From IMG/VR virus record IMGVR_UViG_3300021963_000021, positions 1 through 64,000 of that record: a stretch of 64,000 bases of DNA, one strand, 5' to 3'. Position 1 is the stretch's first letter. Each line of letters begins with the position of its first letter. Positions 2,768 to 23,024 of the stretch are shown in pieces. A program made the translations under genes and the position numbers. The notes beneath the pieces are model-generated. The model was not told the origin of the DNA. It worked only from the letters and a program-made list of their open reading frames with translations, and did not search any database.

Positions 2768-3307
2768 TCAAGTCCAGAGATCAAAGTTGACCAAACACCT
2801 AGGGCCTGTTGTACTAGGGCTACCTGCGTGTAGGATCTTGCCGTCAAACATGACTACACGGCCTTTTTTGGGTGTAACACGTTTGACTATCTGCCTATTG
2901 TTGTCAAAGAACACAGTGTCTCCATCTGCGTCATTGACATAGTAAATGACCACTGTGTGTGCGCCTGGCAGATCCTGATGCGGGTGGAAATGCGTTAGTG
3001 TAGTTGCTGTGGGCGTGGCAATGAATATACGTGCTACTATGATGTCTTTCAGTGTGAGATTGCTCTGTGCGCAGGCTGCTTGTGCTATCATGCCAAAGTT
3101 AGCTAATTCTCTGCTCTGCGCAGTGTTGCTTTTTAATATGTGTACAAAACTCAAAGGTGAATATTCTGGGGTTTCAGCAGTGGGCTCCCATTGGCAACGG
3201 AACTCCACTGTGGGATGTATGAACTCATCACTGCTGCGGCCCAAGCAGATCAGCTCAAAGTAATCCTGTAGATATCCAGGTATTAGATCATCCCAGACTG
3301 TGATCAT
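2768..3307 (-). CDS. 2OG-Fe(II) oxygenase
   Basis: HxD (HQD), YYVNDADGDT, distal His (LHAG) and Arg (PRCLVN). Confidence 0.85.
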   Translation of the reverse strand: MITVWDDLIPGYLQDYFELICLGRSSDEFIHPTVEFRCQWEPTAETPEYSPLSFVHILKSNTAQSRELANFGMIAQAACAQSNLTLKDIIVARIFIATPTATTLTHFHPHQDLPGAHTVVIYYVNDADGDTVFFDNNRQIVKRVTPKKGRVVMFDGKILHAGSPSTTGPRCLVNFDLWT

Positions 3308-4002: not shown

Positions 4003-4689
4003 ATGTTTTACAATGACAGTATTGGAACTTATAAAACTGCTGAGCAGATCAACTCAGCGATGATGCGTGTGTACAATCACATGTGCCTAGCAGTCTGTAC
4101 TTCGGCTGCGGTTGCTGGACTCACAGCCTCCAGCACTGCTCTAATGGCAGTTCTGTTTGGCACAGCTCTAAAGTGGGTCATCATCTTTGCTCCCTTGGTA
4201 GCTATCTTTGCCTTTGCTTGGGCAGCAGATCGTTTGGACCGAACGGGGTTGATCCTATTCCTACACGGTTTTGCTGCGCTGATGGGTCTTAGTATGAGCA
4301 CCATATTTGTGGTCTTTACCATGGGCAGTATCTTTTCAGCATTCATGGGTGCCGCAATCTTGTTTGCTGTGCTCAGTGGCTATGGATACTTTACCAAACG
4401 CAGTCTAGATGGTCTTGGGCAGTTTATGTTTATTGGTTTGATCGCTATCGTTATAGCATCAGTCATTAACATTTTCATAGGCAGCACTGTGATGGCCACA
4501 GTGATTTCAGCATTGGCTATCATCATCTTCTTGGGCTTGACGGCCTATGACACACAGAAGATCCGTGAGATCATCTCAGTGGGCGGTGATACAGGACGTG
4601 AAGAAGTCATTGGCGCACTGACGCTGTACTTGGACTTTATCAACCTGTTTATGAACCTACTACAGTTGATTGGCGTTAAACGTGATTGA
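4003..4689 (+). CDS. Bax inhibitor-1/YccA family 7-TM protein
   Basis: Seven hydrophobic helices; TAYDTQKI and ALTLYLDFINLF motifs. Confidence 0.9.
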   Translation: MFYNDSIGTYKTAEQINSAMMRVYNHMCLAVCTSAAVAGLTASSTALMAVLFGTALKWVIIFAPLVAIFAFAWAADRLDRTGLILFLHGFAALMGLSMSTIFVVFTMGSIFSAFMGAAILFAVLSGYGYFTKRSLDGLGQFMFIGLIAIVIASVINIFIGSTVMATVISALAIIIFLGLTAYDTQKIREIISVGGDTGREEVIGALTLYLDFINLFMNLLQLIGVKRD

Positions 4690-5789: not shown

Positions 5790-6049
5790 CCATTATTTAT
5801 CAGCCTAAGGTGTGTGCTGCGATATATGAATTCTTGGTCTACAACATCGTTGAATGTTTCTAAGACCAGCTGATTGATCTTGGTTTTTGGATCTACGTAA
5901 AGATAGCTCTGTGCGAGTTTAGCATCTAGATCTCGTATCCAACGACTGAGATCTAGACCAAGATGCTGTGCTGCTTCAGCCCAGGCTATTTTAAACTCTT
6001 TGCTGGTAGTGTCTGTCCACTGATATAGTATGTGCTTGTTACACTTCAT
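5771..6049 (-). CDS. hypothetical protein
   Basis: 92-aa ORF overlapping helicase stop. Confidence 0.55.
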   Translation of the reverse strand: MKCNKHILYQWTDTTSKEFKIAWAEAAQHLGLDLSRWIRDLDAKLAQSYLYVDPKTKINQLVLETFNDVVDQEFIYRSTHLRLINNGCEQKK

Positions 6050-7469
6050 CGCTAGAACCCAAACCGTTAATAAACTGCCTTAGTTTGGTTGATTCTACGA
6101 TTGCCTTGACTTTGCCTACTTCTACGCCTTTAGTGGGATCCTGTACGACCCCGTCATCATCTACTACTGTGCTGTTACGACTTTTGATTTGAGAAATTAT
6201 GCTTGAACTACGTTGTGAGCCTGCTTCATCTGATTGTTGATCTTCTGGAAGATCTGCGATACGCAATGTATCAATGTTGAAATCTAGATCTAGTTTTTGT
6301 CCAACACCACTGCTACTACGTGTCTTCATTAACTGGATCTGATAACGACCACGTTCACGCATAGCACGGCTTGTAAAGATACCAAACACGTTATCCGCAG
6401 TTTGAATCTTACTTAGACCACCTGAAATGTGACTGTGATCGAATTCTACTTCTTCTACAGCGCCACGATTCAACTGTGCGGCTGTGACCAACAATACCTG
6501 TTTTTCCATAGCCAAGTTACGCAATTCTTCTGACACATACTTGTCTTTGATAAACAGATTTTCTGCGGAGATCTTTTTACCTATGGGCATCAATAAGTCC
6601 AAATAGTCAACTAAAAGTACGTCTACTTTCTTGCCCATTTGTATTTCATATTCTTTTAGATACGCACGAATATCGTTGGTAGTTTTACCCGATGGCATGT
6701 ATTTGACCTGGAACATACCTGACTTCTTGCCTACTAGTTTGACTTTCATTTCAACATCGTCAATGTTCTTAAAAATGTCTTTGGTAGTCACACCTGTAAG
6801 CATCGAGTCAATACGCATAGATACCAGTGCTTCTGAAAGTTCTAATGTAAGGTACACAACATTAAGACCCATCGTAGCCCAGTTAACACCTAGATTGGCT
6901 AAGAACAAAGATTTGCCAGCACCAGATCCACCTGCCCAAATATTCAGTTCGCCTCTGTTCATACCACCAAACAGTTTACGATCCAAAGTACTCCAACCTG
7001 TAGATACCTGCCCGTTCTTGTCTTTGAGTCCCATCAGTCGTGCTCTAGGATCAGCAAAGTAGTTAGTACCCATGTCTCGAGCAAGGCCGATCTGTACAGC
7101 TTCTTTAACCAGTGCTTCTACCTGTCCGTAGTCTTTCTTTTCTAAAAGATCTGCTGATTTAATAATCGCACGTTCTAGACTCTTATGACGAGTAAACTGT
7201 TCAAAGTCATCTAAGAACCAATCCATGTGGCCGTCTTTGAGTTCACCTGGATGTGCTAGTTCAGTCTTACAGGCCGCATTGACCATGTTATATTCTGGCA
7301 GCACAGAATATTGCTCTGCGTATTGATGTACGAACTCTGCTGCTTCTTGTAGTTTGCGATCAAATAATGTGTGATCAAAAATGCCTTGGCAACGCACAAA
7401 TGTTTCTGCGTCAGCTAACATTATTTCAAGATAGAGTTTTTGTACGTCGTAGTCGTATTCTTTTATCAT
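6039..7469 (-). CDS. dnaB: DnaB/gp41-like replicative helicase
   Basis: Walker A GGSGAGKS, Walker B LLVDYLD, TAAQLNR, QLMKTR. Confidence 0.92.
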   Translation of the reverse strand: MIKEYDYDVQKLYLEIMLADAETFVRCQGIFDHTLFDRKLQEAAEFVHQYAEQYSVLPEYNMVNAACKTELAHPGELKDGHMDWFLDDFEQFTRHKSLERAIIKSADLLEKKDYGQVEALVKEAVQIGLARDMGTNYFADPRARLMGLKDKNGQVSTGWSTLDRKLFGGMNRGELNIWAGGSGAGKSLFLANLGVNWATMGLNVVYLTLELSEALVSMRIDSMLTGVTTKDIFKNIDDVEMKVKLVGKKSGMFQVKYMPSGKTTNDIRAYLKEYEIQMGKKVDVLLVDYLDLLMPIGKKISAENLFIKDKYVSEELRNLAMEKQVLLVTAAQLNRGAVEEVEFDHSHISGGLSKIQTADNVFGIFTSRAMRERGRYQIQLMKTRSSSGVGQKLDLDFNIDTLRIADLPEDQQSDEAGSQRSSSIISQIKSRNSTVVDDDGVVQDPTKGVEVGKVKAIVESTKLRQFINGLGSSDEV

Positions 7470-8426
7470 TTAACTATTATACTGTAATTCAAGATGTTTT
7501 ACAATACCTAAGTTACAGTTTATTCTCTGATTGGTGGTCAACAATGCTGCGCCGATAGCTGAACTACCGTCGCCGGGATCAGGCAATGACCATATACCTT
7601 TCCACTGTCTATTCAGCTTCTTGTTATACTTGCTGTTCATAGCACATCCGCCCATATAGACTAGATTGTCTATTGATGTATAAGAGTGTGCCAAGGCCAT
7701 AACCCAGTCTACCTGTTCTTCGAATACAGTCTGTACAGCAGCAGCAATATCAGCACGATTCTCGTCAGTGACTGGTTCGTCCCAATCCCATACACCTCTG
7801 TGTAGATTTCTATTCAGTGTCATAGGCGCATCAAAATAACCTTTGACTTTGAAATAGTATCTTTTGAAATCACCTTGATCACTGAGTTGCTGAAGCAGAT
7901 GCTCTTCTGCCAGTGGCTTGAATCCTATCAGTTTGGTGAATGCTGAGTAGAACAGGCCTAGACTGTTGGGATAAGATGCTGACCATAGTTTGGTTAATTT
8001 AGTGCCACTGCCTAACCAGATGCTGGCCGATTCCCATTCTCCAATAGCGTCTAACACTACTACTATTGCTTGATTAAATGGGCTGGTAAAAAAACCCGCA
8101 GCAGCATGTGATTTGTGGTGCGGGTGATATACTACTTTAGGATATCTTAGATTCATTGATCTTAGATAGTTGCTCGGCATCACTGACATATCCATGGCAG
8201 CATCCCATTGTCCCGCATACAACTGACGTGTCTTTTTAACCAACGGACGTTCGTACCAAGCGATAGTAGATGGACCTCGATAGCCACTGTAGTCAATGGC
8301 TTCTTTGACCATTTCTGACGTTAGGCGATCGCTGGAGTTATTCCTAATCCAATGTACGGTATCCTTGCCGCCTACTACAGCAATACTAGATCCGTGATTT
8401 AATGCGTTTACGCCCCAGACTATCAT
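7470..8426 (-). CDS. carbamoyltransferase N-terminal (Kae1-like) domain only
   Basis: HGSSIA, HHKSHAAA, DAIGE, SLGLFYS, GGCAMN, PGDGSSAIGAA; no C-terminal YrdC-like domain. Confidence 0.85.
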   Translation of the reverse strand: MIVWGVNALNHGSSIAVVGGKDTVHWIRNNSSDRLTSEMVKEAIDYSGYRGPSTIAWYERPLVKKTRQLYAGQWDAAMDMSVMPSNYLRSMNLRYPKVVYHPHHKSHAAAGFFTSPFNQAIVVVLDAIGEWESASIWLGSGTKLTKLWSASYPNSLGLFYSAFTKLIGFKPLAEEHLLQQLSDQGDFKRYYFKVKGYFDAPMTLNRNLHRGVWDWDEPVTDENRADIAAAVQTVFEEQVDWVMALAHSYTSIDNLVYMGGCAMNSKYNKKLNRQWKGIWSLPDPGDGSSAIGAALLTTNQRINCNLGIVKHLELQYNS

Positions 8427-8512
8427 TTATAGATAAAAGGATCGCGCTTACGCAGTTCACGTATCCTTCTCCTGTACTTGATATAATTGATTAACTTTCT
8501 AAATAAGTTCAT
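8423..8512 (-). CDS. 29-aa basic peptide MNLFRKLINYIKYRRRIRELRKRDPFIYK (absent from ORF track)
   Basis: ATGA overlaps at both ends (primase stop and carbamoyltransferase start). Confidence 0.75.
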   Translation of the reverse strand: MNLFRKLINYIKYRRRIRELRKRDPFIYK

Positions 8513-9504
8513 TTAACTTTTCTCTCGAACTGCTTCATATATAGATTTATCTTGATAGCACCACTGACAGCAGTATTCATGGCATCTACCATAACAAACA
8601 ATTTTCCGTATTTTGCCACAGCATCTGCGCAGTCTTTGACATCCGCATCCCAATTAGGAAATGCCACATGCCAATCATACTTTAATGCGTCTTTGATTAG
8701 ACTAGCACCTGCTCGATCTTGATCAGGAATAACAATCACAGTCTTACCTAGTTTGTTAATCAATCTTGCTTGTTCTTCTGATATCTCGTTGTGTAGTAGT
8801 GCTAGTCCTTGTACAGCAAGAGCATCAAATGGACCTTCTACAACAAATACATACTCTTGTTCTTGTGTAACACTATCCATGTTAAACACAAAATGCGGCT
8901 GTTGTTCACTGAGATATTTTGGCTTGCCTTCTTTGATCTTTCTGGCAGTCCATCCTACTATTCTTCCTGTGTATTTGAACGGTATGATTACACGCTCATC
9001 CATGCCATCTAAAGGACTCCAATAATATTCGCCTAATGGATCAATGCCCCTGCCAACAAGATAGTTAACTACGTTTGCTAGTTTTTGATCAGTATCTGCG
9101 TCCAGTTCTTGATCAATCCATTCGCTTAACAATAGACTACCTTCTGGTAAAGGTTTATCTGGAAATACTACTAGCTCTCTTTTTTGTTCTTTTACTTCAG
9201 GAGCTTCTGCTCTAAGAGCTTCGAATACCATCTTGTTGATATCGTCTTCAGGAGCACCTAACCAACGCATGAAGTTTTTTAGTTTTTGACCGATCTGTCT
9301 GCCTGGTTTCCAACTGGCTGTATATCCGCAGTTGAAACAGTTAAAGACTAGTCCTTCAGAAAATATCACACCACCACGTTGACGATTGTCTGCGGTATGC
9401 CCTCTATGATGACAACAGGGAGCATTGAAGCTAACCCATCCACTGGGTGTTTTTTTGCTTCGATGCGGTAAATGTTGTTTGAATATATCGACTACCAGAC
9501 TCAT
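8509..9504 (-). CDS. DNA primase (gp61/DnaG-like)
   Basis: Zn finger (CFNCG), IIPF...GWTAR, PKYL, TOPRIM VEGPFDA and PDQD. Confidence 0.9.
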   Translation of the reverse strand: MSLVVDIFKQHLPHRSKKTPSGWVSFNAPCCHHRGHTADNRQRGGVIFSEGLVFNCFNCGYTASWKPGRQIGQKLKNFMRWLGAPEDDINKMVFEALRAEAPEVKEQKRELVVFPDKPLPEGSLLLSEWIDQELDADTDQKLANVVNYLVGRGIDPLGEYYWSPLDGMDERVIIPFKYTGRIVGWTARKIKEGKPKYLSEQQPHFVFNMDSVTQEQEYVFVVEGPFDALAVQGLALLHNEISEEQARLINKLGKTVIVIPDQDRAGASLIKDALKYDWHVAFPNWDADVKDCADAVAKYGKLFVMVDAMNTAVSGAIKINLYMKQFERKVK

Positions 9505-10325: not shown

Positions 10326-10697
10326 ATGAGAATCAGCGAGCACTTACAACAAAACTTCCCATTTATCACAGTGATCACGTATGTGGATCAGGAATTTGTG
10401 GGCATAATAATAAATCAAGACGCACAAATAACCAGTATCTACGACTATTCTAGTTTAAAGACAGAATCTGAAAAACAGAAGTTTTTAGAGCTTGGTGAAG
10501 TTTGGTGGTGGGAATCAAATAGACAGATTCCTATTAACATTTTCTTATCTAAAGAAATGTATGAATTCCGATACATTATAAGGAATTTTACAACCAAAGA
10601 TGTAAAGGTCTTGTTTGGACCAGTTACAAGTCTAAATGATATTATGACCAAACGAGTGAAAAGAAAAAGTATCACTCTTATTCGCAAAGCAAAATAG
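10326..10697 (+). CDS. hypothetical protein
   Basis: 123-aa ORF; TATAAATA at 10271-10278. Confidence 0.75.
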   Translation: MRISEHLQQNFPFITVITYVDQEFVGIIINQDAQITSIYDYSSLKTESEKQKFLELGEVWWWESNRQIPINIFLSKEMYEFRYIIRNFTTKDVKVLFGPVTSLNDIMTKRVKRKSITLIRKAK

Positions 10698-11267
10698 TTA
10701 CTGAAATCCGTAACTTATTGTTTCACATATTAAGTTCATCTGTACCACCACCGCCGTAGCATAGGCAATAGCATGTGACTTCTTAAAGAAGTATTCATCG
10801 CTGGCAGGCTTTACCCACACCTCGTCTTCTACATCTTTCCAGCTCTTCCCTATCAAATGCCTCTTTGCTGGCCTGATCATAGCCAGTACTGCCGCAAGCT
10901 GCGGAATTGTTTTCGGCTTCATTGTTCTTAAGATAGAACCATGTCCGTTGACGTGAAAGAGCATACTGCTGAAATCGTCTTGTTCGAGTAAATCCCATAA
11001 CGGCTCCGTGTTCATTAGAATTTCTAAATGCTCTTCTGAGCGTACCTCTTTGTAAATTCCAACGTTTAAAAAATCAATCTTGAAGTAGCCTTGATCTTCC
11101 GCTTCTTCATAGGGAATAGCACATAGACCTGTCGGAGCATGTACAGGAACAGTATGTAGATATACACCTGTGTTGTGTACAGCCATATCTTTGCGACTAG
11201 CCTTGATATGTTTAATATGTGCTAGTGCTTGATTTCTATCAGCAAAGTCTATGTCTATGTCTGGCAT
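10698..11267 (-). CDS. miniature family-C DNA polymerase (DnaE palm-like) protein
   Basis: PDIDIDF, HNTGV, KIDFL, IRP, FKKSHAIAYA motifs in DnaE order within 189 aa. Confidence 0.85.
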   Translation of the reverse strand: MPDIDIDFADRNQALAHIKHIKASRKDMAVHNTGVYLHTVPVHAPTGLCAIPYEEAEDQGYFKIDFLNVGIYKEVRSEEHLEILMNTEPLWDLLEQDDFSSMLFHVNGHGSILRTMKPKTIPQLAAVLAMIRPAKRHLIGKSWKDVEDEVWVKPASDEYFFKKSHAIAYATAVVVQMNLICETISYGFQ

Positions 11268-11497
11268 TATTGTAACCTTGTGGTTTCAAAAAGTAATAAC
11301 GGTAGTGTGTCTTGTAAAAATTGTGCGTATTCTTCTGCGTCTTCGAAATCTTCAAAGCCTGTAAATTTTAGATATACAGCTGGTTCCTCTTCGCCTACTT
11401 CGATTTCAATGCCTATGTCATCTCTTGAAATAAATTCTTCGTTTTCTTGTAGTTCTTCTACTTCAACTTCTACCTGCTCAGTTTTCTTTTTTGTCAT
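11267..11497 (-). CDS. acidic hypothetical protein
   Basis: 76 aa, Glu-rich, TAATG-coupled on both sides. Confidence 0.7.
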   Translation of the reverse strand: MTKKKTEQVEVEVEELQENEEFISRDDIGIEIEVGEEEPAVYLKFTGFEDFEDAEEYAQFLQDTLPLLLFETTRLQ

Positions 11498-12171
11498 TAA
11501 GGCACCTTGGCTTCCTTTAGAACCTCTTTCACTAGCTCAAGATCGCCTGGAGCACTTTTAAATCTGCGACTCCAGTGGTCTGGGTCTAGCATAGGAGATA
11601 CTATTTCTATTTGTTCGTTATTTAACTTGGTAAGCATCTGTCGACCACTTTTACAGTTTAAAATAAACCAAGGACTTACCAATCCTTCTTTTATATGTTT
11701 AGTTGCTCTGTTTAAATTTACATACAAAAAATAATGTTCCCATTGTGCTGAATTTTCTTCAGCCCATTCTAACATTGTAGTCATGGTTCGTTGTATAGCA
11801 CCATCTGCTGGCTCAGTCTTTATTAGCTCAGTGATATAATGATCATACAATTCATCACGACACCAATGATCTAATTTTATTCCACTACGAATAACATAGT
11901 CAATAAATCTCTCTGGATATACAGGATTAGCATTGACTAAAAAACTACCAAATTTTACAAAAGCGTTATAGTATGGGCTTTCTACGAACTCATCGAAGTT
12001 TTTGTGTTTGCCCTTTTGAACCAAATCATAGAATTTTTGATAAGCAATTAACGCAGCCTGTACATGTTTTTCATTGCGACTGAGATGGCGTCTTTTCTTT
12101 TCGCAGATATGTACAGCCAGAGTTTTTTCTCTAGTAAAGTCTTTACCGCAATACACACACTGATAGGTCAT
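11497..12171 (-). CDS. zinc-finger protein (CxxC...H-x-C)
   Basis: YQCVYCGKDF...LAVHIC N-terminus. Confidence 0.75.
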   Translation of the reverse strand: MTYQCVYCGKDFTREKTLAVHICEKKRRHLSRNEKHVQAALIAYQKFYDLVQKGKHKNFDEFVESPYYNAFVKFGSFLVNANPVYPERFIDYVIRSGIKLDHWCRDELYDHYITELIKTEPADGAIQRTMTTMLEWAEENSAQWEHYFLYVNLNRATKHIKEGLVSPWFILNCKSGRQMLTKLNNEQIEIVSPMLDPDHWSRRFKSAPGDLELVKEVLKEAKVP

Positions 12172-13246: not shown

Positions 13247-13749
13247 AATATTTTATCAAGTTGTATTACTTCGCTTTGTCTAGAAATTTCTTTTACGAAA
13301 TAGGCACATGGCGGATTAGGACCTTCACGCAACGGCACTGTTAGTAATTGATTATTTTTCATCTTTGGAAAATACCATTTAACATCCTGATAGATGTTTA
13401 CAATTTCCACTGATGCGTATTCTACTTTGAATCCTTTAATAGGATTAAACAGCATAGCATCAAATCCACGTTCATTGATACTGGTCAATGGCAATACTTC
13501 CGGATCCATTCCGCAGTCTTTGTCCCCAACTAGCATAGCCCAATCCAATGGCATTTGTACTTCATACCCGCCAATCTTTAATACGATGGCCGGCGAATTA
13601 AATGATTCCAGGAAGATAAGTGGTATAAAAAAGAAATCAGGTTCTGTAGGATTAGAATTATCTAATACCGAAAACCGTGTGTCATCTTCTATTTCTTCTG
13701 GTAGATCGTTTAAATCAAACGATTTATTTTCTAATGTTAGTATTCTCAT
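13243..13749 (-). CDS. hypothetical protein
   Basis: 168-aa all-beta-looking ORF coupled to the helicase. Confidence 0.75.
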   Translation of the reverse strand: MRILTLENKSFDLNDLPEEIEDDTRFSVLDNSNPTEPDFFFIPLIFLESFNSPAIVLKIGGYEVQMPLDWAMLVGDKDCGMDPEVLPLTSINERGFDAMLFNPIKGFKVEYASVEIVNIYQDVKWYFPKMKNNQLLTVPLREGPNPPCAYFVKEISRQSEVIQLDKIL

Positions 13750-15203
13750 ATTGTTACCTTGGTTATATTGAAAGGATATTGAGCATCCTTGTAAAATTTC
13801 TTGCGTTCTGTTAAGTGGCGTTTAGCGTATTTGGTGCCGCCTGTTATGTCCCAAATCTGTACAAAATCTTTGTCCTCTGCTTTGCGAATACCTCGTCCTA
13901 TGCTCTGTATGACCCTTACAAAAGATTTGCCAGGTTCAATAAGTATAAGATTAAAAATGCGAGGAATGTTAATCCCCACGGCGGCAACACCATAAGTAGC
14001 AACAATGATCTTATCATCCACAGATCGTACTTCATCGTATGTTTCTTTCCTGTCTTTGGTTTTTACAGATCCGCTAATAAAATCTGCTTCTGGTAATCTT
14101 TCACATAACATTTTGCCTGTTTCGATTCTATCAATTAATACAAGCGTGTTTCCTGTAGCAGCAATGTTTTTAATTTTATTAGCTATCCAATCAACTCTTT
14201 CGGAATCAGTTACTAGATATTTTAATTCCTCAGGATATGACCGGAACTCTTTGATTTCAATAGTCTGTAATACTTCAACGTGACACTCTGCCAACACACC
14301 TTTTTGTTGTAGATCGTGAGCAGAGATACTGTTAATAACTGGCCCTATACTGGCTAACAGACTTGTAAATTCAAATTTTTCTTTAGGAATAGTTCCTGTC
14401 AACCCCCAACGTATTGGGCAATTTGCTAGATCTCTAGTGAGAATATTTTTTAATACTTCTGCTTTGGCTTGATGTACTTCGTCGACAATGATAGCAGCAA
14501 CGTCTTGAAAAAATTCCGCCAATGTCAGCAGTTCAGGATCGTCTTTGCTTTTCTTATCTAATACATTAAGACTCTGCCAAGTACAGATAGTGTGTATTTT
14601 TCCTAGTTCTTTGCGGTCGCCGTAATACACACCTACATCTAGTCCAACGGTTCTAAAATCTTCTTCTGTCTGTTCAACTAACGACTTGTTAGGAACGATA
14701 ACGATAGATCTTCCATATTTTTCACAACAGTGACTTAGTGTAGCAGTGGTAATAGTTTTACCTGCTCCTGTGGCAATTTCTTGAAGGCATTGCGGATTTT
14801 CTAAAAACTTGTTAACAGCATCATATTGATAGTCACGCAGTATAATCGGCTGTCCTTCTGCCGGGTGTCCCTTGGGCCAAACCTTACCTTTGTCTGCCCA
14901 ATAGGTTTCTGTGACCTTAGTGAACTCTAGACTTACCGAAGACCTATGATCTTCGAATTCTACATCATAACCGTCTTTAGTGACGATATCTAATATCTCT
15001 GGTAAGTGGCACATATAGCCTGTACCGCCTATGCCAAAGAAGGCAACAGTACCATCCCAACGTCCGAGACGATAGGAAGGTTGATATCTAGCCCACGGAA
15101 CGTCAATCTTAAACTTGTTGGCTAACTTTCGTCTAGTTTCTAGTGCCAACCCTTCGAATTTAATGTTTACTTCATCTTTTATTATTAGTTTACAATTCGA
15201 CAA
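13746..15203 (-). CDS. uvsW: UvsW-like SF2 DNA helicase
   Basis: LRDYQ, ATGAGKT, DEVH, GLTGT, QSIGRGIR. Confidence 0.9.
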   Translation of the reverse strand: MSNCKLIIKDEVNIKFEGLALETRRKLANKFKIDVPWARYQPSYRLGRWDGTVAFFGIGGTGYMCHLPEILDIVTKDGYDVEFEDHRSSVSLEFTKVTETYWADKGKVWPKGHPAEGQPIILRDYQYDAVNKFLENPQCLQEIATGAGKTITTATLSHCCEKYGRSIVIVPNKSLVEQTEEDFRTVGLDVGVYYGDRKELGKIHTICTWQSLNVLDKKSKDDPELLTLAEFFQDVAAIIVDEVHQAKAEVLKNILTRDLANCPIRWGLTGTIPKEKFEFTSLLASIGPVINSISAHDLQQKGVLAECHVEVLQTIEIKEFRSYPEELKYLVTDSERVDWIANKIKNIAATGNTLVLIDRIETGKMLCERLPEADFISGSVKTKDRKETYDEVRSVDDKIIVATYGVAAVGINIPRIFNLILIEPGKSFVRVIQSIGRGIRKAEDKDFVQIWDITGGTKYAKRHLTERKKFYKDAQYPFNITKVTI

Positions 15204-16461: not shown

Positions 16462-17277
16462 ATGGAAAGAAAAATTGCCGTAGTCACTACATTCAACGAT
16501 CGTGGGCGTATTCAGTATGCTCAAAAAATGATAAACAGCTTCTGCCAAAATTGGCCTAAAGAAGTAACACTATATCTGTACCCTGAGGACACAAATCCCC
16601 AGGTTCCAGCCCATGATAGAATACGTCTTGTGGATCTTGGTACTGGAGTACCGGACCTAAAAGCATTTAAAGACAAATGGAAAGACGTACCTCATGCCAA
16701 TGGCGACATTTCTGGCGTCCCAAGACTGGCATCTAGAAAAGACAGCCATAAACCATTCAAGTGGGATGCGGTAAGATTCGCACATAAAGTGTATTCTATA
16801 TTTCATTGTGCTAAAAATTGTGATGCTGACGTGTTGATATGGATGGATGCTGATATGGTTTGCCATAGCCCTATTACTTTAGAAAAAATCAACGAAATGA
16901 TTCCAGAAGGTGCTGATCTTTGTTATCTAGGAAGGAAGGGCAAGTTCTCAGAATGTGGCCTGTATTCAATGAATCTACGATCTCCTATGGTAAAAACGTT
17001 TCTACAAGAATTTCAAAGAATGTACGACGACGCAGAGCACGGAATTTTTTATCTTGACGAATGGCACGATAGTTTTGTGTTCGATGCTGTCAGACAAAAA
17101 ATGCCATTTCTACAACAGGTAGATTGGAGCAACGGAATTATCACCGGAGAAGGCCATCCGTTAATTAACAGCAAATGGGGTGCCTATCTTGACCATCTCA
17201 AAGGTGACAGAAAAGCTCAAGGCAAGAGTCATTTGAAAGATTTAAAAGTAAAAAGACAAGAAGCATACTGGCAATGA
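16462..17277 (+). CDS. GT-A fold glycosyltransferase
   Basis: FAHKV, IWMDAD (DxD), WHDS, HLKG; TAAATA 4 nt upstream. Confidence 0.75.
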   Translation: MERKIAVVTTFNDRGRIQYAQKMINSFCQNWPKEVTLYLYPEDTNPQVPAHDRIRLVDLGTGVPDLKAFKDKWKDVPHANGDISGVPRLASRKDSHKPFKWDAVRFAHKVYSIFHCAKNCDADVLIWMDADMVCHSPITLEKINEMIPEGADLCYLGRKGKFSECGLYSMNLRSPMVKTFLQEFQRMYDDAEHGIFYLDEWHDSFVFDAVRQKMPFLQQVDWSNGIITGEGHPLINSKWGAYLDHLKGDRKAQGKSHLKDLKVKRQEAYWQ

Positions 17278-17882
17278 TATTAGATACACAACCAAAAACT
17301 TTTGTAATCGCAATTAAAGGACATCCCATTAGCGAAAAACAACTCCAAGAATGTTTAGATACTGCTAAAGCATACAACTGGAGTGTAGAAGTGTTTTGGG
17401 GTGTAAATGGCAAAACAATTACACCAGAAACTTGGCTTTCGGAAGGTCTAACTCCTAGATTAGATAAACCAACAATGGGCTCGCTTGGTGTACAAGGTTG
17501 CTTTTTGAGTCATTATTCGTTATGGAAACGTTGTGTAGAACTCAACGAACCTATCATCATTTTTGAACACGATGCGTTGATCCAAGGCAACTGGATTCCT
17601 ATAAATTTAGACAACGCTGTGGTAAAATTACATAGATATTACAAGCCAAAAAATCTTAAATTTGATGATGACTCGGGTCTATGGTCTCCATCGGGGCATG
17701 CCTATTGTATTTCTCCAACACACGCAACAATTTTAATTAATTTTGTAAAACAAGTAGGTGCGTTTGAAGTAGATAGGGTGTTAGGTGATAAAGTTATACC
17801 AGTAATACACCTAGGAAAGCCTTCATTAGTCGAAAGACAAGATTCTTATTCAACAACAAATAATTTAGAGGAACACCTATGA
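17274..17882 (+). CDS. glycosyltransferase family 25
   Basis: GCFLSHYSLW, IIIFEHDA, AYCISP. Confidence 0.85.
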   Translation: MILDTQPKTFVIAIKGHPISEKQLQECLDTAKAYNWSVEVFWGVNGKTITPETWLSEGLTPRLDKPTMGSLGVQGCFLSHYSLWKRCVELNEPIIIFEHDALIQGNWIPINLDNAVVKLHRYYKPKNLKFDDDSGLWSPSGHAYCISPTHATILINFVKQVGAFEVDRVLGDKVIPVIHLGKPSLVERQDSYSTTNNLEEHL

Positions 17883-18499
17883 AAGAACCTAGAGTTGAGA
17901 ACAGAGAAGGATGGGTGTGGCCTGTTCAAGATGTAAAATGTTGGGAGTGGTTACAGGCTGAAAAAGATCTTCCTAACTTGATTTCTTCTTACTGTGCTAA
18001 TAAACGTGTAGTCGTACAGGCAGGAGGAAACTGTGGCTTTTATGTTAAACCCTATGCTCAGATGTTTGAGACCGTTTATACATTTGAACCAAATTCATTG
18101 AATTTTTATTGCCTAACTAATAATGTATGGGAAGGAAATGTTGTTAAAATTCAAGCCTGCTTAGGTGATTCTCATAATTCAGTTGGGTTAACTTATAAAA
18201 AAGTAAATTCTGGAGTGAGTAGAGTACACGGCGAAGGGATATTTCCCACTTTCAAGATTGACGACTTAGGTTTATCAAATTGTGACCTAATACATCTGGA
18301 TATCGAAGGCTACGAAATGTTTGCGTTAAAAGGCGGCATAGAAACCATCAAAGAATTCAAGCCAATAATTGCTTTAGAATGGCTAGATCATAATAATCAA
18401 TTTGGCATTAGCGCAGACGACATACTTAATTGGTTAACAGAGTTAGGATACAAAGAAATTGCTTCTTTATACCACGAAAAGGTCTTTTCAGCATCATGA
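17879..18499 (+). CDS. FkbM-family methyltransferase
   Basis: VQAGGNCG, FEP, LDIEGYE, PIIALE. Confidence 0.85.
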   Translation: MKEPRVENREGWVWPVQDVKCWEWLQAEKDLPNLISSYCANKRVVVQAGGNCGFYVKPYAQMFETVYTFEPNSLNFYCLTNNVWEGNVVKIQACLGDSHNSVGLTYKKVNSGVSRVHGEGIFPTFKIDDLGLSNCDLIHLDIEGYEMFALKGGIETIKEFKPIIALEWLDHNNQFGISADDILNWLTELGYKEIASLYHEKVFSAS

Positions 18500-20016
18500 A
18501 ATCATTTATTATTCATTTATCAAAGATACCAGCTTCCTTAAAAACTGCGTTAGATGTTAAACAACAATTAGAGTCGTTTGGTATGGAAGCCGAACTGTTC
18601 GAAGGGTCGTACGGCAACGAAGTAAAAGAAAGATATGCCAGGGAAGGTCGTCGATATCATCCTTGGAATTTTAAAAATGGTCCTGAAAATCCGTTTCCTG
18701 AAGAATTTCGTGACAGCCAACAAAACCCAGGAGAAATGGGCTGCTTTGACAGCCATTATCGCTTGTGGGAAAAATGTGTAGAACTCAACGAGCCTATTTT
18801 AATTTTTGAAGATGACGTAATTTTTGAAAGACCATACCTTCCTGTAACATTTAATGAAGTATTGATTACAGTTTTTGGAAATTTAACCAAGTCAGCAAAA
18901 TATTTTCACTATTATACATCGCCGACTGGAGATCCTCGGGCTGAGTGGTACGGCCAGGCATCTATGCCAGGTACTCCGGGATATGCTATCAAACCATCGG
19001 CTGCTAAAAAACTTGTAGAAATGTATAAAAACACTTGGTTGCCATCAGACAATGCTATGATGATAAACATTGTAGGTATACAAGTACATAGTCATGTCAT
19101 GGGCAGAGCATTGATAGCCGAAGATGGCAAAAAATCATTGGTTCGAGGAAAAAATAATTTTTGGGGAAAGCAGGAAATGAAAAAGAAGGTGTTAATCACA
19201 GGTAACTCCGGATATATTGGCTCACATCTTACACAACTGTTAGTAAAAGATTCAAACATTGAGATACATGGACTAGATAAGAACGACCCGATAAAACCTG
19301 TTTCAAAATTTTTCCATAGAGACATTACACACGATACTGAATGGTATATTGAACACGAGTACGACTGTGTTATACATCTCGCAGCAGAAGTAGCTGTAGG
19401 AAGAAGTGTAGAAACACCAACATTGTATTATCAAACCAATACAATTGGTACACTCAATGTTCTTAAGAAAATAAAAACCAAGAGATTAGTGATAGCATCG
19501 ACAGGTGCTGCTGCGGGTATGGGAAGTCCTTACGGAATCAGCAAACGAGCTATGGAAGATATTGTTTTTGAATATTGTAAAACTCATAATATTCCATTTA
19601 CAATTTTTAGATTTTACAATGTTACCGGTAGCGACGGAATAGAACCAACTAATCCAGATGGGCTGTTTGCTAGCTTAATCGCTGCTACTAAGACTGGCAA
19701 TTTTACAATCTTTGGTAATGATTATAACACAGAAGACGGCACATGTATCAGAGATTATACACATGTCAATGAAATATGCCATTCAGTAGTCGAAGCAATA
19801 GATAAGTCAACTAATCAAATAGAAAATCTAGGGCACGGTGTTGGCACTAGTGTAACACAGATGGTAGATATCTTTAAAAGAGTGAACGGTGCTGATTTTA
19901 ATGTTACTATAGGATCTCGTAGAGAAGGTGATCTTGAAAGAAGCGTACTAACTAATCCTTCACCTTTTATGAAAAAACTTTATCCTATTGAAGATCTATT
20001 AACAATGAAAAAATAA
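18496..20016 (+). CDS. GT25 glycosyltransferase fused to NAD-dependent epimerase (GalE-like)
   Basis: N-terminal GCFDSHY/FEDD; C-terminal ITGNSGYIG, YGISK, FRFYNV, DGTCIRDY; ATGA overlap at 18496. Confidence 0.85.
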   Translation: MKSFIIHLSKIPASLKTALDVKQQLESFGMEAELFEGSYGNEVKERYAREGRRYHPWNFKNGPENPFPEEFRDSQQNPGEMGCFDSHYRLWEKCVELNEPILIFEDDVIFERPYLPVTFNEVLITVFGNLTKSAKYFHYYTSPTGDPRAEWYGQASMPGTPGYAIKPSAAKKLVEMYKNTWLPSDNAMMINIVGIQVHSHVMGRALIAEDGKKSLVRGKNNFWGKQEMKKKVLITGNSGYIGSHLTQLLVKDSNIEIHGLDKNDPIKPVSKFFHRDITHDTEWYIEHEYDCVIHLAAEVAVGRSVETPTLYYQTNTIGTLNVLKKIKTKRLVIASTGAAAGMGSPYGISKRAMEDIVFEYCKTHNIPFTIFRFYNVTGSDGIEPTNPDGLFASLIAATKTGNFTIFGNDYNTEDGTCIRDYTHVNEICHSVVEAIDKSTNQIENLGHGVGTSVTQMVDIFKRVNGADFNVTIGSRREGDLERSVLTNPSPFMKKLYPIEDLLTMKK

Positions 20017-20018
20017 TT

Positions 20019-20651
20019 ATGTCAGATAATTTAGAAGAAATATGGTCAAAGTCAATGGCCGAAAACAGTCAGCTAGGATTGGAATCTATTAGCGGTGTTG
20101 GCTCAACATTAAGATACACTGAAAATCTAAGAAAAGAATTGCCACATCTGATTGAAAAATTTTCTATTAAATCTATATTCGACGCACCGTGCGGTGATAT
20201 GAATTGGATGAATGTGTTTTTAAATGAGCACCCTATAAAATATATCGGCGGCGACATAGTTAATCAAGTAGTAGATAGTAATCAACAGTACACTAATAAT
20301 CTTACTAAAGTAGTGAAATTAGACATTACAACTGACCCGTTTCCTTCGGCAGATTTATGGATTTGTAGAGACTGCTGGTTTCATTTGCCAGATGAAAAGA
20401 TATTTTTATCTATTGATAATTTTTTAAAATCAGATATTAAATTTTTGTTGACTACTACACATATCAACACTGGATTTAATAATTCCGATTTAGCTACTGT
20501 TGGATTTAAATTAATAGATCTTTTTTCTTCTCCATATAATTTTCCAAAACCTTTATACAAAATTACAGACTACTACGGAAAAAAATTACCTAGAGAAATG
20601 GTGTTGTTTAGCAAAGAACAATTAGTAGCATGGAAAAAATCCCAAGAATAA
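20019..20651 (+). CDS. class I SAM-dependent methyltransferase
   Basis: SGVGS, FDAPCGD, YIGGDIV, CRDCWFHL. Confidence 0.8.
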   Translation: MSDNLEEIWSKSMAENSQLGLESISGVGSTLRYTENLRKELPHLIEKFSIKSIFDAPCGDMNWMNVFLNEHPIKYIGGDIVNQVVDSNQQYTNNLTKVVKLDITTDPFPSADLWICRDCWFHLPDEKIFLSIDNFLKSDIKFLLTTTHINTGFNNSDLATVGFKLIDLFSSPYNFPKPLYKITDYYGKKLPREMVLFSKEQLVAWKKSQE

Positions 20652-21304
20652 TTTATTGTTTTTGGTTCGGGCCAGAAATGTCTGCTGATCGAGCTAGGTG
20701 CTTTCAAAGCATTACACAACACTCTAAAGTTGATGTAAAATTAATAACTGAGAACAATCTTAAAAATTATCTAACAACACCAATACACGACGGTTTCAAA
20801 TATCTAAGCTCAACTCATAAATCAGATTATCTCAGATCCTATTTCATGTATCATTATGGTGGAGGATACACTGATATTAAACAGTGCGATTTTGACTGGA
20901 ATCCTTATTTTGATTGTTTAGAAAACAGCGATAAGTCGTTTATCGGATGTCCGCAGTACAGCCCGAAACATATTGCTTATCGACCCTACAAAGAGTTTTA
21001 TAATGATCTTATTGGGTGTACTAATTTTATTTTTAAAAAACAATCAAAGTTTGGAAAACTTTGGTATGATCAAACAAATTATGTAATGGATTTAAAACTA
21101 GCTGCGTTAAAAAATAATCCAGGGACATATCATCATCGAGCGATTTTAGGTGGAGTACAAGGTATACCTGATATTTTTAATGAATCAAAATATCCGCTGA
21201 CTTGGAATGAATTACTGGGACAAATTTTTCATAAACTTCAATACGAAAATCGTGAAGATTATATGATTGGAACACCGTTCCCAAATATAGAAAATTATCG
21301 CTGA
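20630..21304 (+). CDS. GT32/capsular polysaccharide synthesis-like glycosyltransferase
   Basis: IPRIIYCFW, SDYLR, YGGGYTDI. Confidence 0.8.
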   Translation: MEKIPRIIYCFWFGPEMSADRARCFQSITQHSKVDVKLITENNLKNYLTTPIHDGFKYLSSTHKSDYLRSYFMYHYGGGYTDIKQCDFDWNPYFDCLENSDKSFIGCPQYSPKHIAYRPYKEFYNDLIGCTNFIFKKQSKFGKLWYDQTNYVMDLKLAALKNNPGTYHHRAILGGVQGIPDIFNESKYPLTWNELLGQIFHKLQYENREDYMIGTPFPNIENYR

Positions 21305-22236
21305 ATAAATTTTTTCATATGATCCCAGCATTCGCCGGATCTTAATTCGTCAAACTTCCAGTGTGACATTGCTAGTCGCTCAACCCAGGCCTGTCTATCT
21401 GGCATCCACGGATTTTCCATCTTAGAAAGATCTGTATTGGCAATATCTCTACATTGACTGTTTGTCGGATCAGTAACAAACACCGGATATCCTTCTATAG
21501 CTGCTCCGACCACTGGACTAGAATTATGATTCACCGCAGCCCAACAGTTTTTTAAATCGTCTAATAGGTTTTCATTGTGACTCAATGTAACACCGTAGTC
21601 AAATTTAATTTTACACAAGGGACCGCCGGCTTTAACAATTCGTTTAGTTTCTTTATCTCCTGGGTGTAGTCTAATTACTATAGGTCTACTACTGTATTTT
21701 CTAATCTCTTTGATAGTATTCACAGCCCAGTCTTGATTATTTAGACCTCTCATAGACCATCCGCCATTTCTCTGTAAGCATAGTAATATATGGCTTCCGG
21801 TTTCTCTGTAGTCTTTGAGTTGTAGGTTTAAATCTTTGCTGATCGACTTCCACCGTTCTGGATTTACTTCAGTATCGCAGTAAATGCCCGTGTTAGGAAA
21901 AATTCCATTAAAACTGTATCTAAGATAATGATAAGGATTAGTTGTGTCTGCGTAAAGGAATAGATTACTGTCTACACCTACAACATATCTTGAATGCTCT
22001 AGTTGATTTTTTATAACTCTGGCTCTTAGATCACCGTGAGGGCTTGTTGGCTGTCCGTCAGCGACCCACCCTTGTATAACCGCAACATCAGCAGCAGAAT
22101 AGACCGAGTAGTTGTTAATATCAAATACTGTTTCGCCTTTAGCTCTGGCACCTTGGGCAAATAATCTCAAGATATCCATTTTTTCTTGATTCTTATTGTT
22201 AGGCACTGACTTGTGATATACTGCTAAAAGTGTCAT
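21295..22236 (-). CDS. GT-B-like capsule biosynthesis protein (KpsS-like)
   Basis: ILLCLQ, IRLHP, NSSPVVGAAIEGYPV. Confidence 0.65.
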   Translation of the reverse strand: MTLLAVYHKSVPNNKNQEKMDILRLFAQGARAKGETVFDINNYSVYSAADVAVIQGWVADGQPTSPHGDLRARVIKNQLEHSRYVVGVDSNLFLYADTTNPYHYLRYSFNGIFPNTGIYCDTEVNPERWKSISKDLNLQLKDYRETGSHILLCLQRNGGWSMRGLNNQDWAVNTIKEIRKYSSRPIVIRLHPGDKETKRIVKAGGPLCKIKFDYGVTLSHNENLLDDLKNCWAAVNHNSSPVVGAAIEGYPVFVTDPTNSQCRDIANTDLSKMENPWMPDRQAWVERLAMSHWKFDELRSGECWDHMKKFIQR

Positions 22237-23024
22237 TGTGTTAACATCCTTAACGCTGTTCCGTTATTCATTTCTGTGACATGAAACTGTCCGTATGCCA
22301 AGTGGCATCCCCATGCGTATAATTTATCCTGCGATGGATAGTAAGGTTCGTTTATACTAGATAGGTCTTGACTTGCCACAGGCATGGCAGCATTAGCAGG
22401 TGCTAGCGTAAAGGCTGGAATTCCATGAAAAATACTTTCGATAGCAGCTACGCTATTATATGTAACTAGAGCAAACACATCGTCATCTAATGCCTGCTGT
22501 AGTGTATTATGTGATATTCTATCTATTCTTTGTTTTGCTCGTTCTCTTACGACTATCGGTCTGTCAGTGTATTGTTTTATAGTGTCTATGGTGTTTTGTA
22601 CCCATGTTTCTTTGTCTACACCATAAAATTTACAGGGTTTTTCATCTGGCGCTGCTATAAGAATCTTCCTACCAGACTTTTTCCAAGGATTAAATGTTTT
22701 ATTAAATTGCTTGAATCTGTCGTCTGGCCTTGGAATTATATCTGTATGCTGTAGATTGTTTTTAACTATGCGATGCCAATATTTCCATCCGTTGGGATTC
22801 TTATTAGTTTTTTCGTTACCAAAATATCCAGTGTCAACATAGTAAAAATCTCTGTTGTCGTCCCAACACTGTTTCATTAATTTATATTTGAGTATTCCTC
22901 TAATGACTATCGGATCAGTGCTGTCTTCGTAAGTAAAATTACTAGAGTTCATAGGCTGAAACCCAGAACCTCGAGCAAAATTATTAATGTATTCGTCTTG
23001 GCCGTTCTTACTTAAAAATATCAT
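22233..23024 (-). CDS. GT-B-like capsule biosynthesis protein (paralogous fold)
   Basis: DTGYF, RPIVVR, YNSVAAIESIFHGIP. Confidence 0.65.
   Translation of the reverse strand: MIFLSKNGQDEYINNFARGSGFQPMNSSNFTYEDSTDPIVIRGILKYKLMKQCWDDNRDFYYVDTGYFGNEKTNKNPNGWKYWHRIVKNNLQHTDIIPRPDDRFKQFNKTFNPWKKSGRKILIAAPDEKPCKFYGVDKETWVQNTIDTIKQYTDRPIVVRERAKQRIDRISHNTLQQALDDDVFALVTYNSVAAIESIFHGIPAFTLAPANAAMPVASQDLSSINEPYYPSQDKLYAWGCHLAYGQFHVTEMNNGTALRMLTQ

What the first reader, a model, noticed from the sequence alone, without database searches (positions are those of the whole stretch)
10698..11267. 189-aa miniature family-C polymerase: a compressed DnaE catalytic core
Seen: MPDIDIDF, VHNTGVYL, GYFKIDFLNV, LFHV, LAMIRPAK and YFFKKSHAIAYA. 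Established: these correspond in order to DnaE motifs PDFDVDF (two catalytic Asp), HAGGVVI, GLVKFDFLGL (third Asp), FQLE, RPGP and YGFNKSHSAAYA, which span roughly 360 aa of a ~1160-aa enzyme. All three catalytic Asp are kept while the intervening thumb and finger segments, PHP, HhH and OB domains are absent. The ORF starts right at the motif and is coupled to upstream genes, so it looks like a selected minimal enzyme rather than a random fragment. Inference: a stand-alone nucleotidyltransferase (priming, terminal addition, signal or modified-nucleotide synthesis), or the catalytic subunit of a multi-chain polymerase.
Basis: partly seen in the sequence, partly recalled or inferred. Interest (0 to 1): 0.8.

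Follow-up and report, generated by a model that had tools for sequence, protein, structure and literature searches.

The report
Half of a split mini DNA polymerase
This 189-residue phage gene is real and conserved, but it is only the metal-binding half of a two-piece, stripped-down bacterial-type DNA polymerase that was already described in giant phages in 2021, not a complete miniature enzyme.

Summary
The ORF (10698-11267, minus strand, 189 aa) and all six DnaE-like motifs are confirmed. They map in order onto E. coli DnaE 400-765, including the three catalytic Asp (D401/D403/D555), K553 and the steric-gate His760. The family is large (382 clusters at 50% identity), has a conserved length of about 183-219 aa, and is under strong purifying selection (dN/dS 0.03-0.1). 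AlphaFold models it with pLDDT 97, and only C-family polymerases match in the PDB. It is not a stand-alone enzyme. It lacks the GRGS nucleotide-binding loop (E. coli 323-393). In every cultured relative checked (RaK2-, PA5oct- and Atu_ph07-like jumbo phages), that loop sits on a separate protein of about 170 aa encoded far away. That protein ends exactly where this ORF begins. No intein is involved. Rare 375-aa natural fusions join the two halves with a 9-aa linker. This is the split minimal Pol III alpha that Iyer et al. (Viruses 2021) reported for group 2.2 jumbo phages. The window is the first 64 kb of a 364-kb uncultivated jumbo-phage contig. The partner gene is not in the window, and I could not locate it in the rest of the contig. 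Verdict: a new member of a known kind. Its biochemistry has not been tested.

The parts
10698..11267 (-). C-terminal unit (Mg2+/template-binding half) of the split minimal Pol III alpha-like polymerase, 189 aa. D3/D5/D7 correspond to E. coli D401/D403/D405, H31-G34 to H511-G514, K63/D65 to K553/D555, R132-P133 to R639-P640, and S164-H165 to S759-H760.
10326..10697 (+). Convergent 123-aa gene (phrog_11637, function unknown) that abuts the stop of the C-unit. The same convergent pair is conserved in Phosso, Atu_ph07, L262 and beside the fused 376-aa form in L100.
   Evidence: Atlas search uninformative
11267..11497 (-). Upstream 76-aa acidic ORF, translationally coupled to the C-unit by a TAATG overlap. 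The protein is not conserved in Phosso or L100, so it is context only.
11497..12171 (-). 224-aa protein with an N-terminal C2H2-like zinc-finger motif (phrog_11058), in the same overlapping gene chain. Context only.
8509..9504 (-). DNA primase (phrog_47), downstream on the same strand. Replisome neighbourhood.
   Evidence: synteny
6039..7469 (-). DnaB-like replicative helicase (phrog_19, Pfam DnaB_C). Replisome neighbourhood.
13746..15203 (-). SF2 DNA helicase (ResIII/DEAD/Helicase_C; phrog_16), upstream in the same overlapping gene chain.

Best explanation
ORF 10698-11267(-) encodes the C-terminal unit of the two-piece minimal C-family (Pol III alpha/DnaE-like) DNA polymerase typical of RaK2/PA5oct/Atu_ph07-type (group 2.2) jumbo myoviruses. 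Shown: it carries the palm strands with the three metal-binding Asp and the conserved Lys. It also carries a pared-down finger segment with the RP motif and the Ser-His steric-gate helix. The thumb (about 82 aa), a finger insert of about 88 aa, everything after E. coli residue ~784, and the PHP domain are absent. Shown in relatives: the other half of the active site is a separate protein of about 160-185 aa (the N-unit). It holds the GRGS phosphate-binding loop and flanking palm helices (E. coli 323-393), always ends at ...EFL[KR], and is encoded tens to hundreds of kb away beside a GroES-like gene and the clamp loader. Inferred: the two proteins associate non-covalently, since no intein is present, and rebuild a polymerase core of about 360 aa with a composite active site, so neither half is active alone. 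Inferred from the conserved steric-gate His and the DnaE-type fourth Asp: the enzyme selects dNTPs and copies a DNA template. Inferred from the missing thumb, clamp-binding and exonuclease parts, and from both genes lying in replisome neighbourhoods: it is a distributive accessory polymerase (primer extension/hand-off, gap filling or repair). In relatives it works beside a T4-like family B replicase.
For: Family membership: phrog_11778 matches at 3e-64 over the full length. There are 96 phage records, all jumbo myoviruses, and 94 of them cover at least 80% of the query. Synteny of C-unit, convergent small gene, structural gene, primase and DnaB is shared with Phosso and Atu_ph07. Conservation: there are 382 clusters at 50% identity, with full-length members of 183-219 aa, and more than 8000 hits at 90% clustering. 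D3, D5, K63, D65 and P133 are invariant, and D7, H31, G34, R132, K162 and H165 are at least 90% conserved across 83 diverse members. dN/dS is 0.03 against the nearest relative and the median is 0.11 over 73 pairs. Homology to DnaE: profile against PDB, hhalign, motif positions in E. coli DnaE, and an AF2 model with pLDDT 96.9 whose top 14 PDB fold matches are all C-family polymerases. Partner: Atu_ph07 gp316 and homologues in Phosso, PA5oct, RaK2 and SCTP-2. The N-unit shows the same genus counts as the C-unit. Its residues 107-177 align to E. coli 323-393. In 76 uncultivated contigs, N-units are 159-184 aa, and every one of the 15 commonest C-terminal 8-mers printed (42 of the 76 contigs) ends in EFL[KR] or EFMR. 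Fusion: P0234, P0271 and P0272 (375-376 aa) are N-unit plus a 9-aa linker plus C-unit, sitting at the C-unit locus. The Pfam PF07733 match runs across the junction. The fused model has pLDDT 84 and pTM 0.83, and its top 18 PDB matches are all DnaE/PolC. Literature: Iyer et al. 2021 describe exactly this split. Catalytic Asp and D405 are covered in PMC3919608, and the H760 steric gate in PMC8485763.
Against: The N-unit is not in the 64-kb window (tblastn; six-frame HMM search). I could not locate it in the remaining 300 kb of the source contig, so its presence in this genome is inferred from relatives. No physical interaction, polymerase activity or expression has been measured for any member, according to literature searches. 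The C-unit folds confidently on its own, so an independent role is not excluded. No family B polymerase lies in the window. The proposed replisome role rests only on gene neighbourhood.
Confidence: 0.8

Rival explanations
1. Stand-alone miniature nucleotidyltransferase. The 189-aa protein by itself catalyses priming, terminal addition or synthesis of a signal or modified nucleotide.
For: All three catalytic Asp and K63 are invariant. The protein is predicted to fold as a compact unit alone, with pLDDT 96.9. The ORF starts exactly at the DxD motif.
Against: The GRGS loop that holds the triphosphate in Pol-beta-type and C-family enzymes is absent and lies on a separate protein. That protein co-occurs in the same cultured phage genera. 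Natural fusions exist. The split falls inside one Pfam domain. The conserved steric-gate His argues for dNTP use on a template.
Confidence: 0.06
2. The two-piece enzyme is real but is not a templated DNA polymerase. It could be a terminal transferase, a primase-like initiator, or a nucleotide-modifying or anti-defence nucleotidyltransferase.
For: It has no thumb, no clamp-binding region and no proofreading domain. A family B replicase exists in relatives, so a second replicase is not obviously needed. No biochemistry has been published.
Against: Finger motifs that contact template and incoming dNTP in DnaE are retained and nearly invariant: RP, KSH and the steric-gate His. Fold matches are exclusively C-family polymerases, and CCA-adding enzymes appear only at E>5. 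Both genes sit in replisome neighbourhoods.
Confidence: 0.1
3. Decaying fragment or catalytically dead remnant of a dnaE gene captured from a host.
For: It covers only about a sixth of DnaE. Its Pfam matches are below threshold: PF17657 at 12.9 bits against a cut-off of 22.
Against: Length is conserved and catalytic residues are invariant across 382 clusters. dN/dS is 0.03-0.11. Synteny is conserved across distant jumbo phages. The model is highly confident.
Confidence: 0.02
4. Halves of an intein-split dnaE that are joined by protein trans-splicing, as in cyanobacterial DnaE.
For: Two dnaE pieces are encoded far apart.
Against: N-units end directly at EFL[KR], and C-units start within about 10 residues of DxDxD. 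The fused forms need only a 9-aa linker, and E. coli has 6 residues (394-399) between the aligned ends. There is therefore no room for a ~100-aa IntN or a ~35-aa IntC.
Confidence: 0.01

Closest known systems
Split minimal DNA Pol III alpha of group 2.2 jumbo phages (Iyer, Anantharaman, Krishnan, Burroughs, Aravind, Viruses 2021; PMC7824862); C-terminal unit = phrog_11778
   Same: Same protein family (phrog_11778 at 3e-64). Same architecture: about 190 aa starting at DxDxD. Same kind of genome: a jumbo myovirus with T4-like core genes and DnaB. Same gene neighbourhood as Atu_ph07 and Phosso.
   Different: This copy comes from an uncultivated 364-kb freshwater or estuarine-type metagenome contig. 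It is only 54-55% identical to the nearest cultured copies. The partner N-unit has not yet been seen in this genome.
Bacterial DnaE1 (E. coli, Thermus aquaticus, M. tuberculosis Pol III alpha; PDB 2hnh, 3e0d, 5lew)
   Same: It shares the catalytic Asp triad, K553, the DnaE-specific D405, the HxxG strand, the RP motif, the KSH steric-gate helix and the palm/finger fold.
   Different: It is about 189 aa (about 360 aa with its partner) against about 1160 aa. It has no PHP, no thumb, a truncated fingers domain, and no clamp-binding, OB or tau-binding domains. The active site is divided between two polypeptides.
Cyanobacterial intein-split DnaE (basis: established knowledge, not tested with a tool)
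   Same: dnaE is encoded as two separate genes far apart.
   Different: There the split lies elsewhere in a full-length enzyme and is healed by a split intein. Here there are no intein sequences, and the break lies between the GRGS helices and the DxD strand.
Full-length Pol III alpha/PolC of group 3.2 jumbo phages (phage G type) and other phages (phrog_405)
   Same: A C-family polymerase carried by a phage. phrog_405 gives a weak match at 3e-7.
   Different: Those are host-like, full-length enzymes with a PHP domain, and they are the phage's main replicase. The mini version accompanies a family B polymerase in relatives.

Membership tests
C-family DNA polymerase (Pol III alpha / DnaE) | Three catalytic Asp (E. 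coli D401, D403, D555) on palm strands | tested here: met
   D3, D5 and D65 are invariant in 83 diverse homologues. They align to Taq D463/D465/D618 and E. coli D401/D403/D555.
C-family DNA polymerase (Pol III alpha / DnaE) | GRGS phosphate-binding loop in the same polypeptide | tested here: not met
   The 189-aa ORF contains no GRGS. The motif lies on the separate N-unit in relatives.
C-family DNA polymerase (Pol III alpha / DnaE) | Finger helix with the Ser-His steric gate (E. coli S759-H760) | tested here: met
   KKSH lies at 162-165, and H165 is at least 90% conserved. Its role is taken from PMC8485763.
C-family DNA polymerase (Pol III alpha / DnaE) | PHP domain, thumb, clamp-binding and OB domains | tested here: not met
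   The ORF corresponds only to E. coli ~400-784, with the thumb and a finger insert deleted. No Pfam PHP, HhH or OB hit was found.
C-family DNA polymerase (Pol III alpha / DnaE) | Passes the Pfam gathering score for PF07733 or PF17657 | tested here: not met
   PF17657 scores 12.9 bits against a cut-off of 22, and there is no PF07733 hit. N-units and fused forms do pass PF07733.
C-family DNA polymerase (Pol III alpha / DnaE) | DnaE-type fourth Asp (E. coli D405; Asn in PolC) | tested here: met
   D7 is at least 90% conserved. The criterion comes from PMC3919608.
Split minimal Pol III alpha of group 2.2 jumbo phages, C-terminal unit | Full-length match to the ~190-aa phage family that starts at DxDxD | tested here: met
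   phrog_11778 matches residues 3-183 to profile positions 8-194 of 197. 94 of 96 phage hits cover at least 80% of the query.
Split minimal Pol III alpha of group 2.2 jumbo phages, C-terminal unit | Separate N-terminal NTP-binding unit encoded elsewhere in the same genome | tested here: inconclusive
   It is absent from the 64-kb window. The other 300 kb of the contig could not be read. The unit is present in Atu_ph07, Phosso, PA5oct, RaK2 and SCTP-2, with matching genus counts.
Split minimal Pol III alpha of group 2.2 jumbo phages, C-terminal unit | Host genome is a jumbo myovirus with a T4-like replication and recombination core | tested here: met
   The source contig is 363,943 bp. DnaB, primase, UvsX, UvsY, gp32-like SSB, TerL and tail sheath are all in the window.
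Split minimal Pol III alpha of group 2.2 jumbo phages, C-terminal unit | Accompanied by a family B DNA polymerase | tested here: inconclusive
   Atu_ph07 PolB gp276/gp277 finds no match in the window.
Intein-split DnaE | IntN at the end of the N piece and IntC at the start of the C piece | tested here: not met
   There are no extra residues at either end. The fused forms have a 9-aa linker, and the gap in E. coli is 6 aa.

The most novel reading that the evidence does not exclude
The N- and C-units assemble into a self-sufficient, template-directed, dNTP-selective DNA polymerase of only about 360 residues. That would be the smallest C-family polymerase. It would perform a defined replisome step, such as extending primase products before hand-off to the family B replicase. 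The split would make activity depend on co-expression of two operons: the primase-helicase side and the clamp-loader side. The independent secondary fusion (375-aa forms) would then be a ready-made single-chain version for study.
Probability: 0.4. Interest if true: 0.6.

Novelty: new member of a known kind. Interest (0 to 1): 0.35.

Why it matters
If the pair is active, it defines the minimal catalytic core of the bacterial replicase family. That bears on how C-family polymerases arose, which is the argument of Iyer et al. It would also offer a very small engineering scaffold. For this scan the value is mainly corrective. The gene should be annotated as the C-terminal unit of the split minimal Pol III alpha, not as a complete polymerase. 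Three additions may be new relative to the 2021 description, which I could read only in part: the exact break point (E. coli 393 | 400, inside Pfam PF07733), the conserved steric-gate His, and the rare natural fusions.

Tried and rejected
- Searches for the N-unit partner inside the window found nothing. These were tblastn with Atu_ph07 gp316 and an HMM of five N-units against all six frames (best E 0.3).
- I tried several ways to locate the partner in the rest of the source contig.
  - IMG/VR scans with an N-unit alignment, with the C-unit and with a freshwater N-unit did not help. The source contig is not among the returned loci, and the top-80 lists share no contig.
  - An exact look-up of an N-unit from the sister sample led to a different phage contig in the same sample, Ga0222712_10000094.
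  - One walking step along the contig reached only 73 kb and showed giant structural genes. I abandoned this route as too slow for the look-up cap.
- A combined alignment of the fused protein with many N- and C-units was misaligned by MAFFT (A3 and A5) and was discarded. A 21-row alignment (A6) was used instead.
Those rows were not sent again.
- The promoter and terminator scan was no better than shuffles for promoters.
- The Atlas search for the convergent neighbour was uninformative.
- phmmer of the single protein against PDB sequences found nothing. The family profile was needed.

Full report
**Observation.** The window has one ORF at 10698..11267 on the minus strand (189 aa, ATG start). 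The finding did not state the strand. The stop of the upstream 76-aa ORF overlaps this start as TAATG. Nine ORFs from 16389 down to 10698 overlap or abut each other.

**What the window is.** An exact look-up places the protein on JGI contig Ga0222712_10000006 (sample 3300021963, 363,943 bp). The window is its first 64 kb. No cultured phage matches at the DNA level. The window carries a T4-like core:
- DnaB helicase and primase
- an SF2 helicase
- UvsX, UvsY and a gp32-like SSB
- large terminase, tail sheath and tail tube

The source is therefore an uncultivated jumbo myovirus.

**Family.**
- The protein matches phrog_11778 ('DNA polymerase', profile of 197 positions) over its full length at 3e-64.
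- tblastn finds it in 96 phage records, all jumbo myoviruses: Phosso, Atu_ph07, PA5oct-like, RaK2-like, XacN1, SCTP-2 and others. In 94 of them at least 80% of the query is covered.
- Gene order is shared with Phosso and Atu_ph07: C-unit, convergent small gene, virion protein, primase, DnaB.
- In metagenomes it is very common. More than 8000 clusters at 90% identity were scored, typically 192 aa. An exhaustive HMMER scan found 382 clusters at 50% identity, with full-length members of 183-219 aa that start within about 10 residues of the DxDxD motif.
- Across 83 diverse members (30-67% identical to the query), D3, D5, K63, D65 and P133 are invariant. D7, H31, G34, R132, K162 and H165 are at least 90% conserved.
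- Against the nearest relative (L262) there are 42 synonymous and 7 non-synonymous differences, giving dN/dS 0.03. The median over 73 pairs with 0.05<dS<1 is 0.11.

The 'decaying fragment' reading is excluded.

**Relation to DnaE.** The family profile hits Taq, M. tuberculosis and E. coli Pol III alpha in the PDB at E 2e-5 to 1e-4. The match comes in three collinear pieces: Taq 460-, 601-705 and 809-824. hhalign aligns residues 51-135 to E. coli 541-642. Using the real E. coli K-12 DnaE sequence, the mapping is as follows.

| C-unit | E. coli DnaE |
|---|---|
| D3 / D5 / D7 | D401 / D403 / D405 |
| H31-G34 | H511-G514 |
| K63 / D65 | K553 / D555 |
| F103 | F609 |
| R132-P133 | R639-P640 |
| S164-H165 | S759-H760 |

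- D401, D403 and D555 are the catalytic residues. D405 is DnaE-specific and is Asn in PolC (PMC3919608).
- H760 is the proposed steric gate against ribonucleotides (PMC8485763).
- About 82 residues (the thumb) are missing between D405 and H511.
- About 88 residues are missing between P640 and N757.
- Everything after about residue 784 is absent, and so is the PHP domain.
- AlphaFold2 with the 83-row alignment gives pLDDT 96.9 and pTM 0.89. The top 14 Foldseek PDB matches are all C-family polymerases, with probability about 1 for the first six and TM 0.39-0.47 normalised to the query.

**Why it is not a complete enzyme.**
- The ORF has no GRGS loop, the element that holds the incoming triphosphate in this fold.
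- Atu_ph07 has a second small 'DNA polymerase', gp316 (177 aa), about 183 kb from its C-unit. Homologues are found in cultured phages with the same genus counts as the C-unit. Additional hits are full-length DnaE of unrelated phages.
- Five cultured N-units align well and end in ...GxGRGSxVxSxxLxxIG...EFL[KR]. Residues 107-177 align to E. coli 323-393, ending at FERFLN393.
- The C-unit begins at P400-D401. The break therefore falls in the six-residue loop 394-399, inside Pfam domain PF07733. N-units match profile positions about 17-95 of that domain.
- In 76 uncultivated viral contigs the N-unit is 159-184 aa. Every one of the 15 commonest C-terminal 8-mers printed, covering 42 of the 76, ends in EFL[KR] or EFMR.
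- The N-unit usually sits upstream of a GroES-like gene and the clamp loader.
- There is no room for intein fragments at either end.

**Natural fusions.** The exhaustive search returned one 375-aa protein whose residues 190-370 match the C-unit. It and two relatives (375-376 aa, 78-81% identical, from different ENA and Logan samples) consist of N-unit, a 9-aa linker and C-unit.
- In contig L100 the fused gene is followed by the same convergent phrog_11637-like gene that follows the C-unit in the window. The fusion therefore sits at the C-unit locus.
- Its closest relatives are ordinary split units, so the fusion is probably secondary.
- PF07733 matches across the junction: residues 97-207 to profile positions 12-121.
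- The AF2 model of the fusion has pLDDT 83.9 and pTM 0.83. Its top 18 PDB matches are all DnaE or PolC, at E 9e-8 to 3e-3 and TM 0.45-0.57.

This is Rosetta-stone evidence that the two proteins form one enzyme.

**Prior knowledge.** Iyer et al. (Viruses 2021, PMC7824862) describe this in group 2.2 jumbo phages. [quoted passage not shown] I found no biochemical study.

**Mechanism.**
- Shown: the C-unit holds the metal ligands, K63 and the finger motifs. The N-unit of relatives holds the GRGS loop.
- Inferred: the two associate non-covalently into a core of about 360 aa with a composite active site. Neither half alone should be active.
- Inferred from H165 and D7: the enzyme is dNTP-selective and DnaE-like.
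- Inferred from the missing thumb, clamp-binding region and exonuclease, and from the neighbourhoods (primase and DnaB for the C-unit, clamp loader for the N-unit): it is a distributive accessory polymerase. Candidate roles are primer extension and hand-off, gap filling or repair, beside the family B replicase.

**Limits.**
- The N-unit and a family B polymerase are not in the window.
- I could not read the other 300 kb of the contig. Their presence in this genome is inferred from relatives.
Phage specificity is consistent with the data but not proven here.

Noticed in passing
P0234, P0271, P0272; locus L100:519-1649(+): There are rare single-chain forms (375-376 aa) in which the N-unit and C-unit are fused through a 9-aa linker. 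They sit at the C-unit locus, and their nearest relatives are split. I did not see this in the parts of Iyer et al. 2021 that I could read.
   Followed up: yes
window 10326-10697 (+): A lone plus-strand 123-aa gene (phrog_11637) has a Trp-rich core and a basic tail. Its stop abuts the C-unit stop with no spacer. The convergent pair is conserved in Phosso, Atu_ph07, L262 and beside the fused form. Its function is unknown, and a link to the polymerase is possible.
   Followed up: partly
window 1 (contig start); L165 = IMGVR_UViG_3300042350_002797: A related uncultivated contig of 364,554 bp carries its C-unit at about 11.7 kb on the reverse strand. That is almost the same total length and offset as the source contig (363,943 bp; 10.7 kb). 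Both assemblies may start at a real genome end.
   Followed up: no
window 7470-8426 (-) and 56995-58821 (-): There are two carbamoyltransferase-like genes. One is a short N-domain-only copy wedged between primase and DnaB. The other is a full NodU/Nol-like copy of 608 aa next to a Glyco_transf_9 gene.
   Followed up: no
window 16462-24458: This is a block of glycosyltransferase, epimerase/dehydratase and methyltransferase genes (Glyco_transf_25, Glycos_transf_2, Methyltransf_21, GDP_Man_Dehyd). It lies directly upstream of the replication gene chain. Possible targets are sugar modification of the virion, the DNA or the host surface.
   Followed up: no
window 4003-4689 (+) and 2768-3307 (-): A Bax inhibitor-1-like membrane protein (PF01027) and a 2OG-Fe(II) oxygenase are encoded near the contig start.
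   Followed up: no
window 46965-54791 (-); contig 64.2-76.6 kb (L263): There are three giant structural proteins of 2608, 2086 and 2028 aa. The latter two lie just beyond the window and carry CBM_5_12 carbohydrate-binding repeats.
   Followed up: no
L093 = Ga0222712_10000094 (same sample): A second, different jumbo phage in the same metagenome carries its own N-unit. The gene order is N-unit, four small ORFs, clamp loader, a small ORF, then PhoH on the opposite strand. An identical N-unit protein is listed in 68 index blocks of the contig collection.
   Followed up: partly
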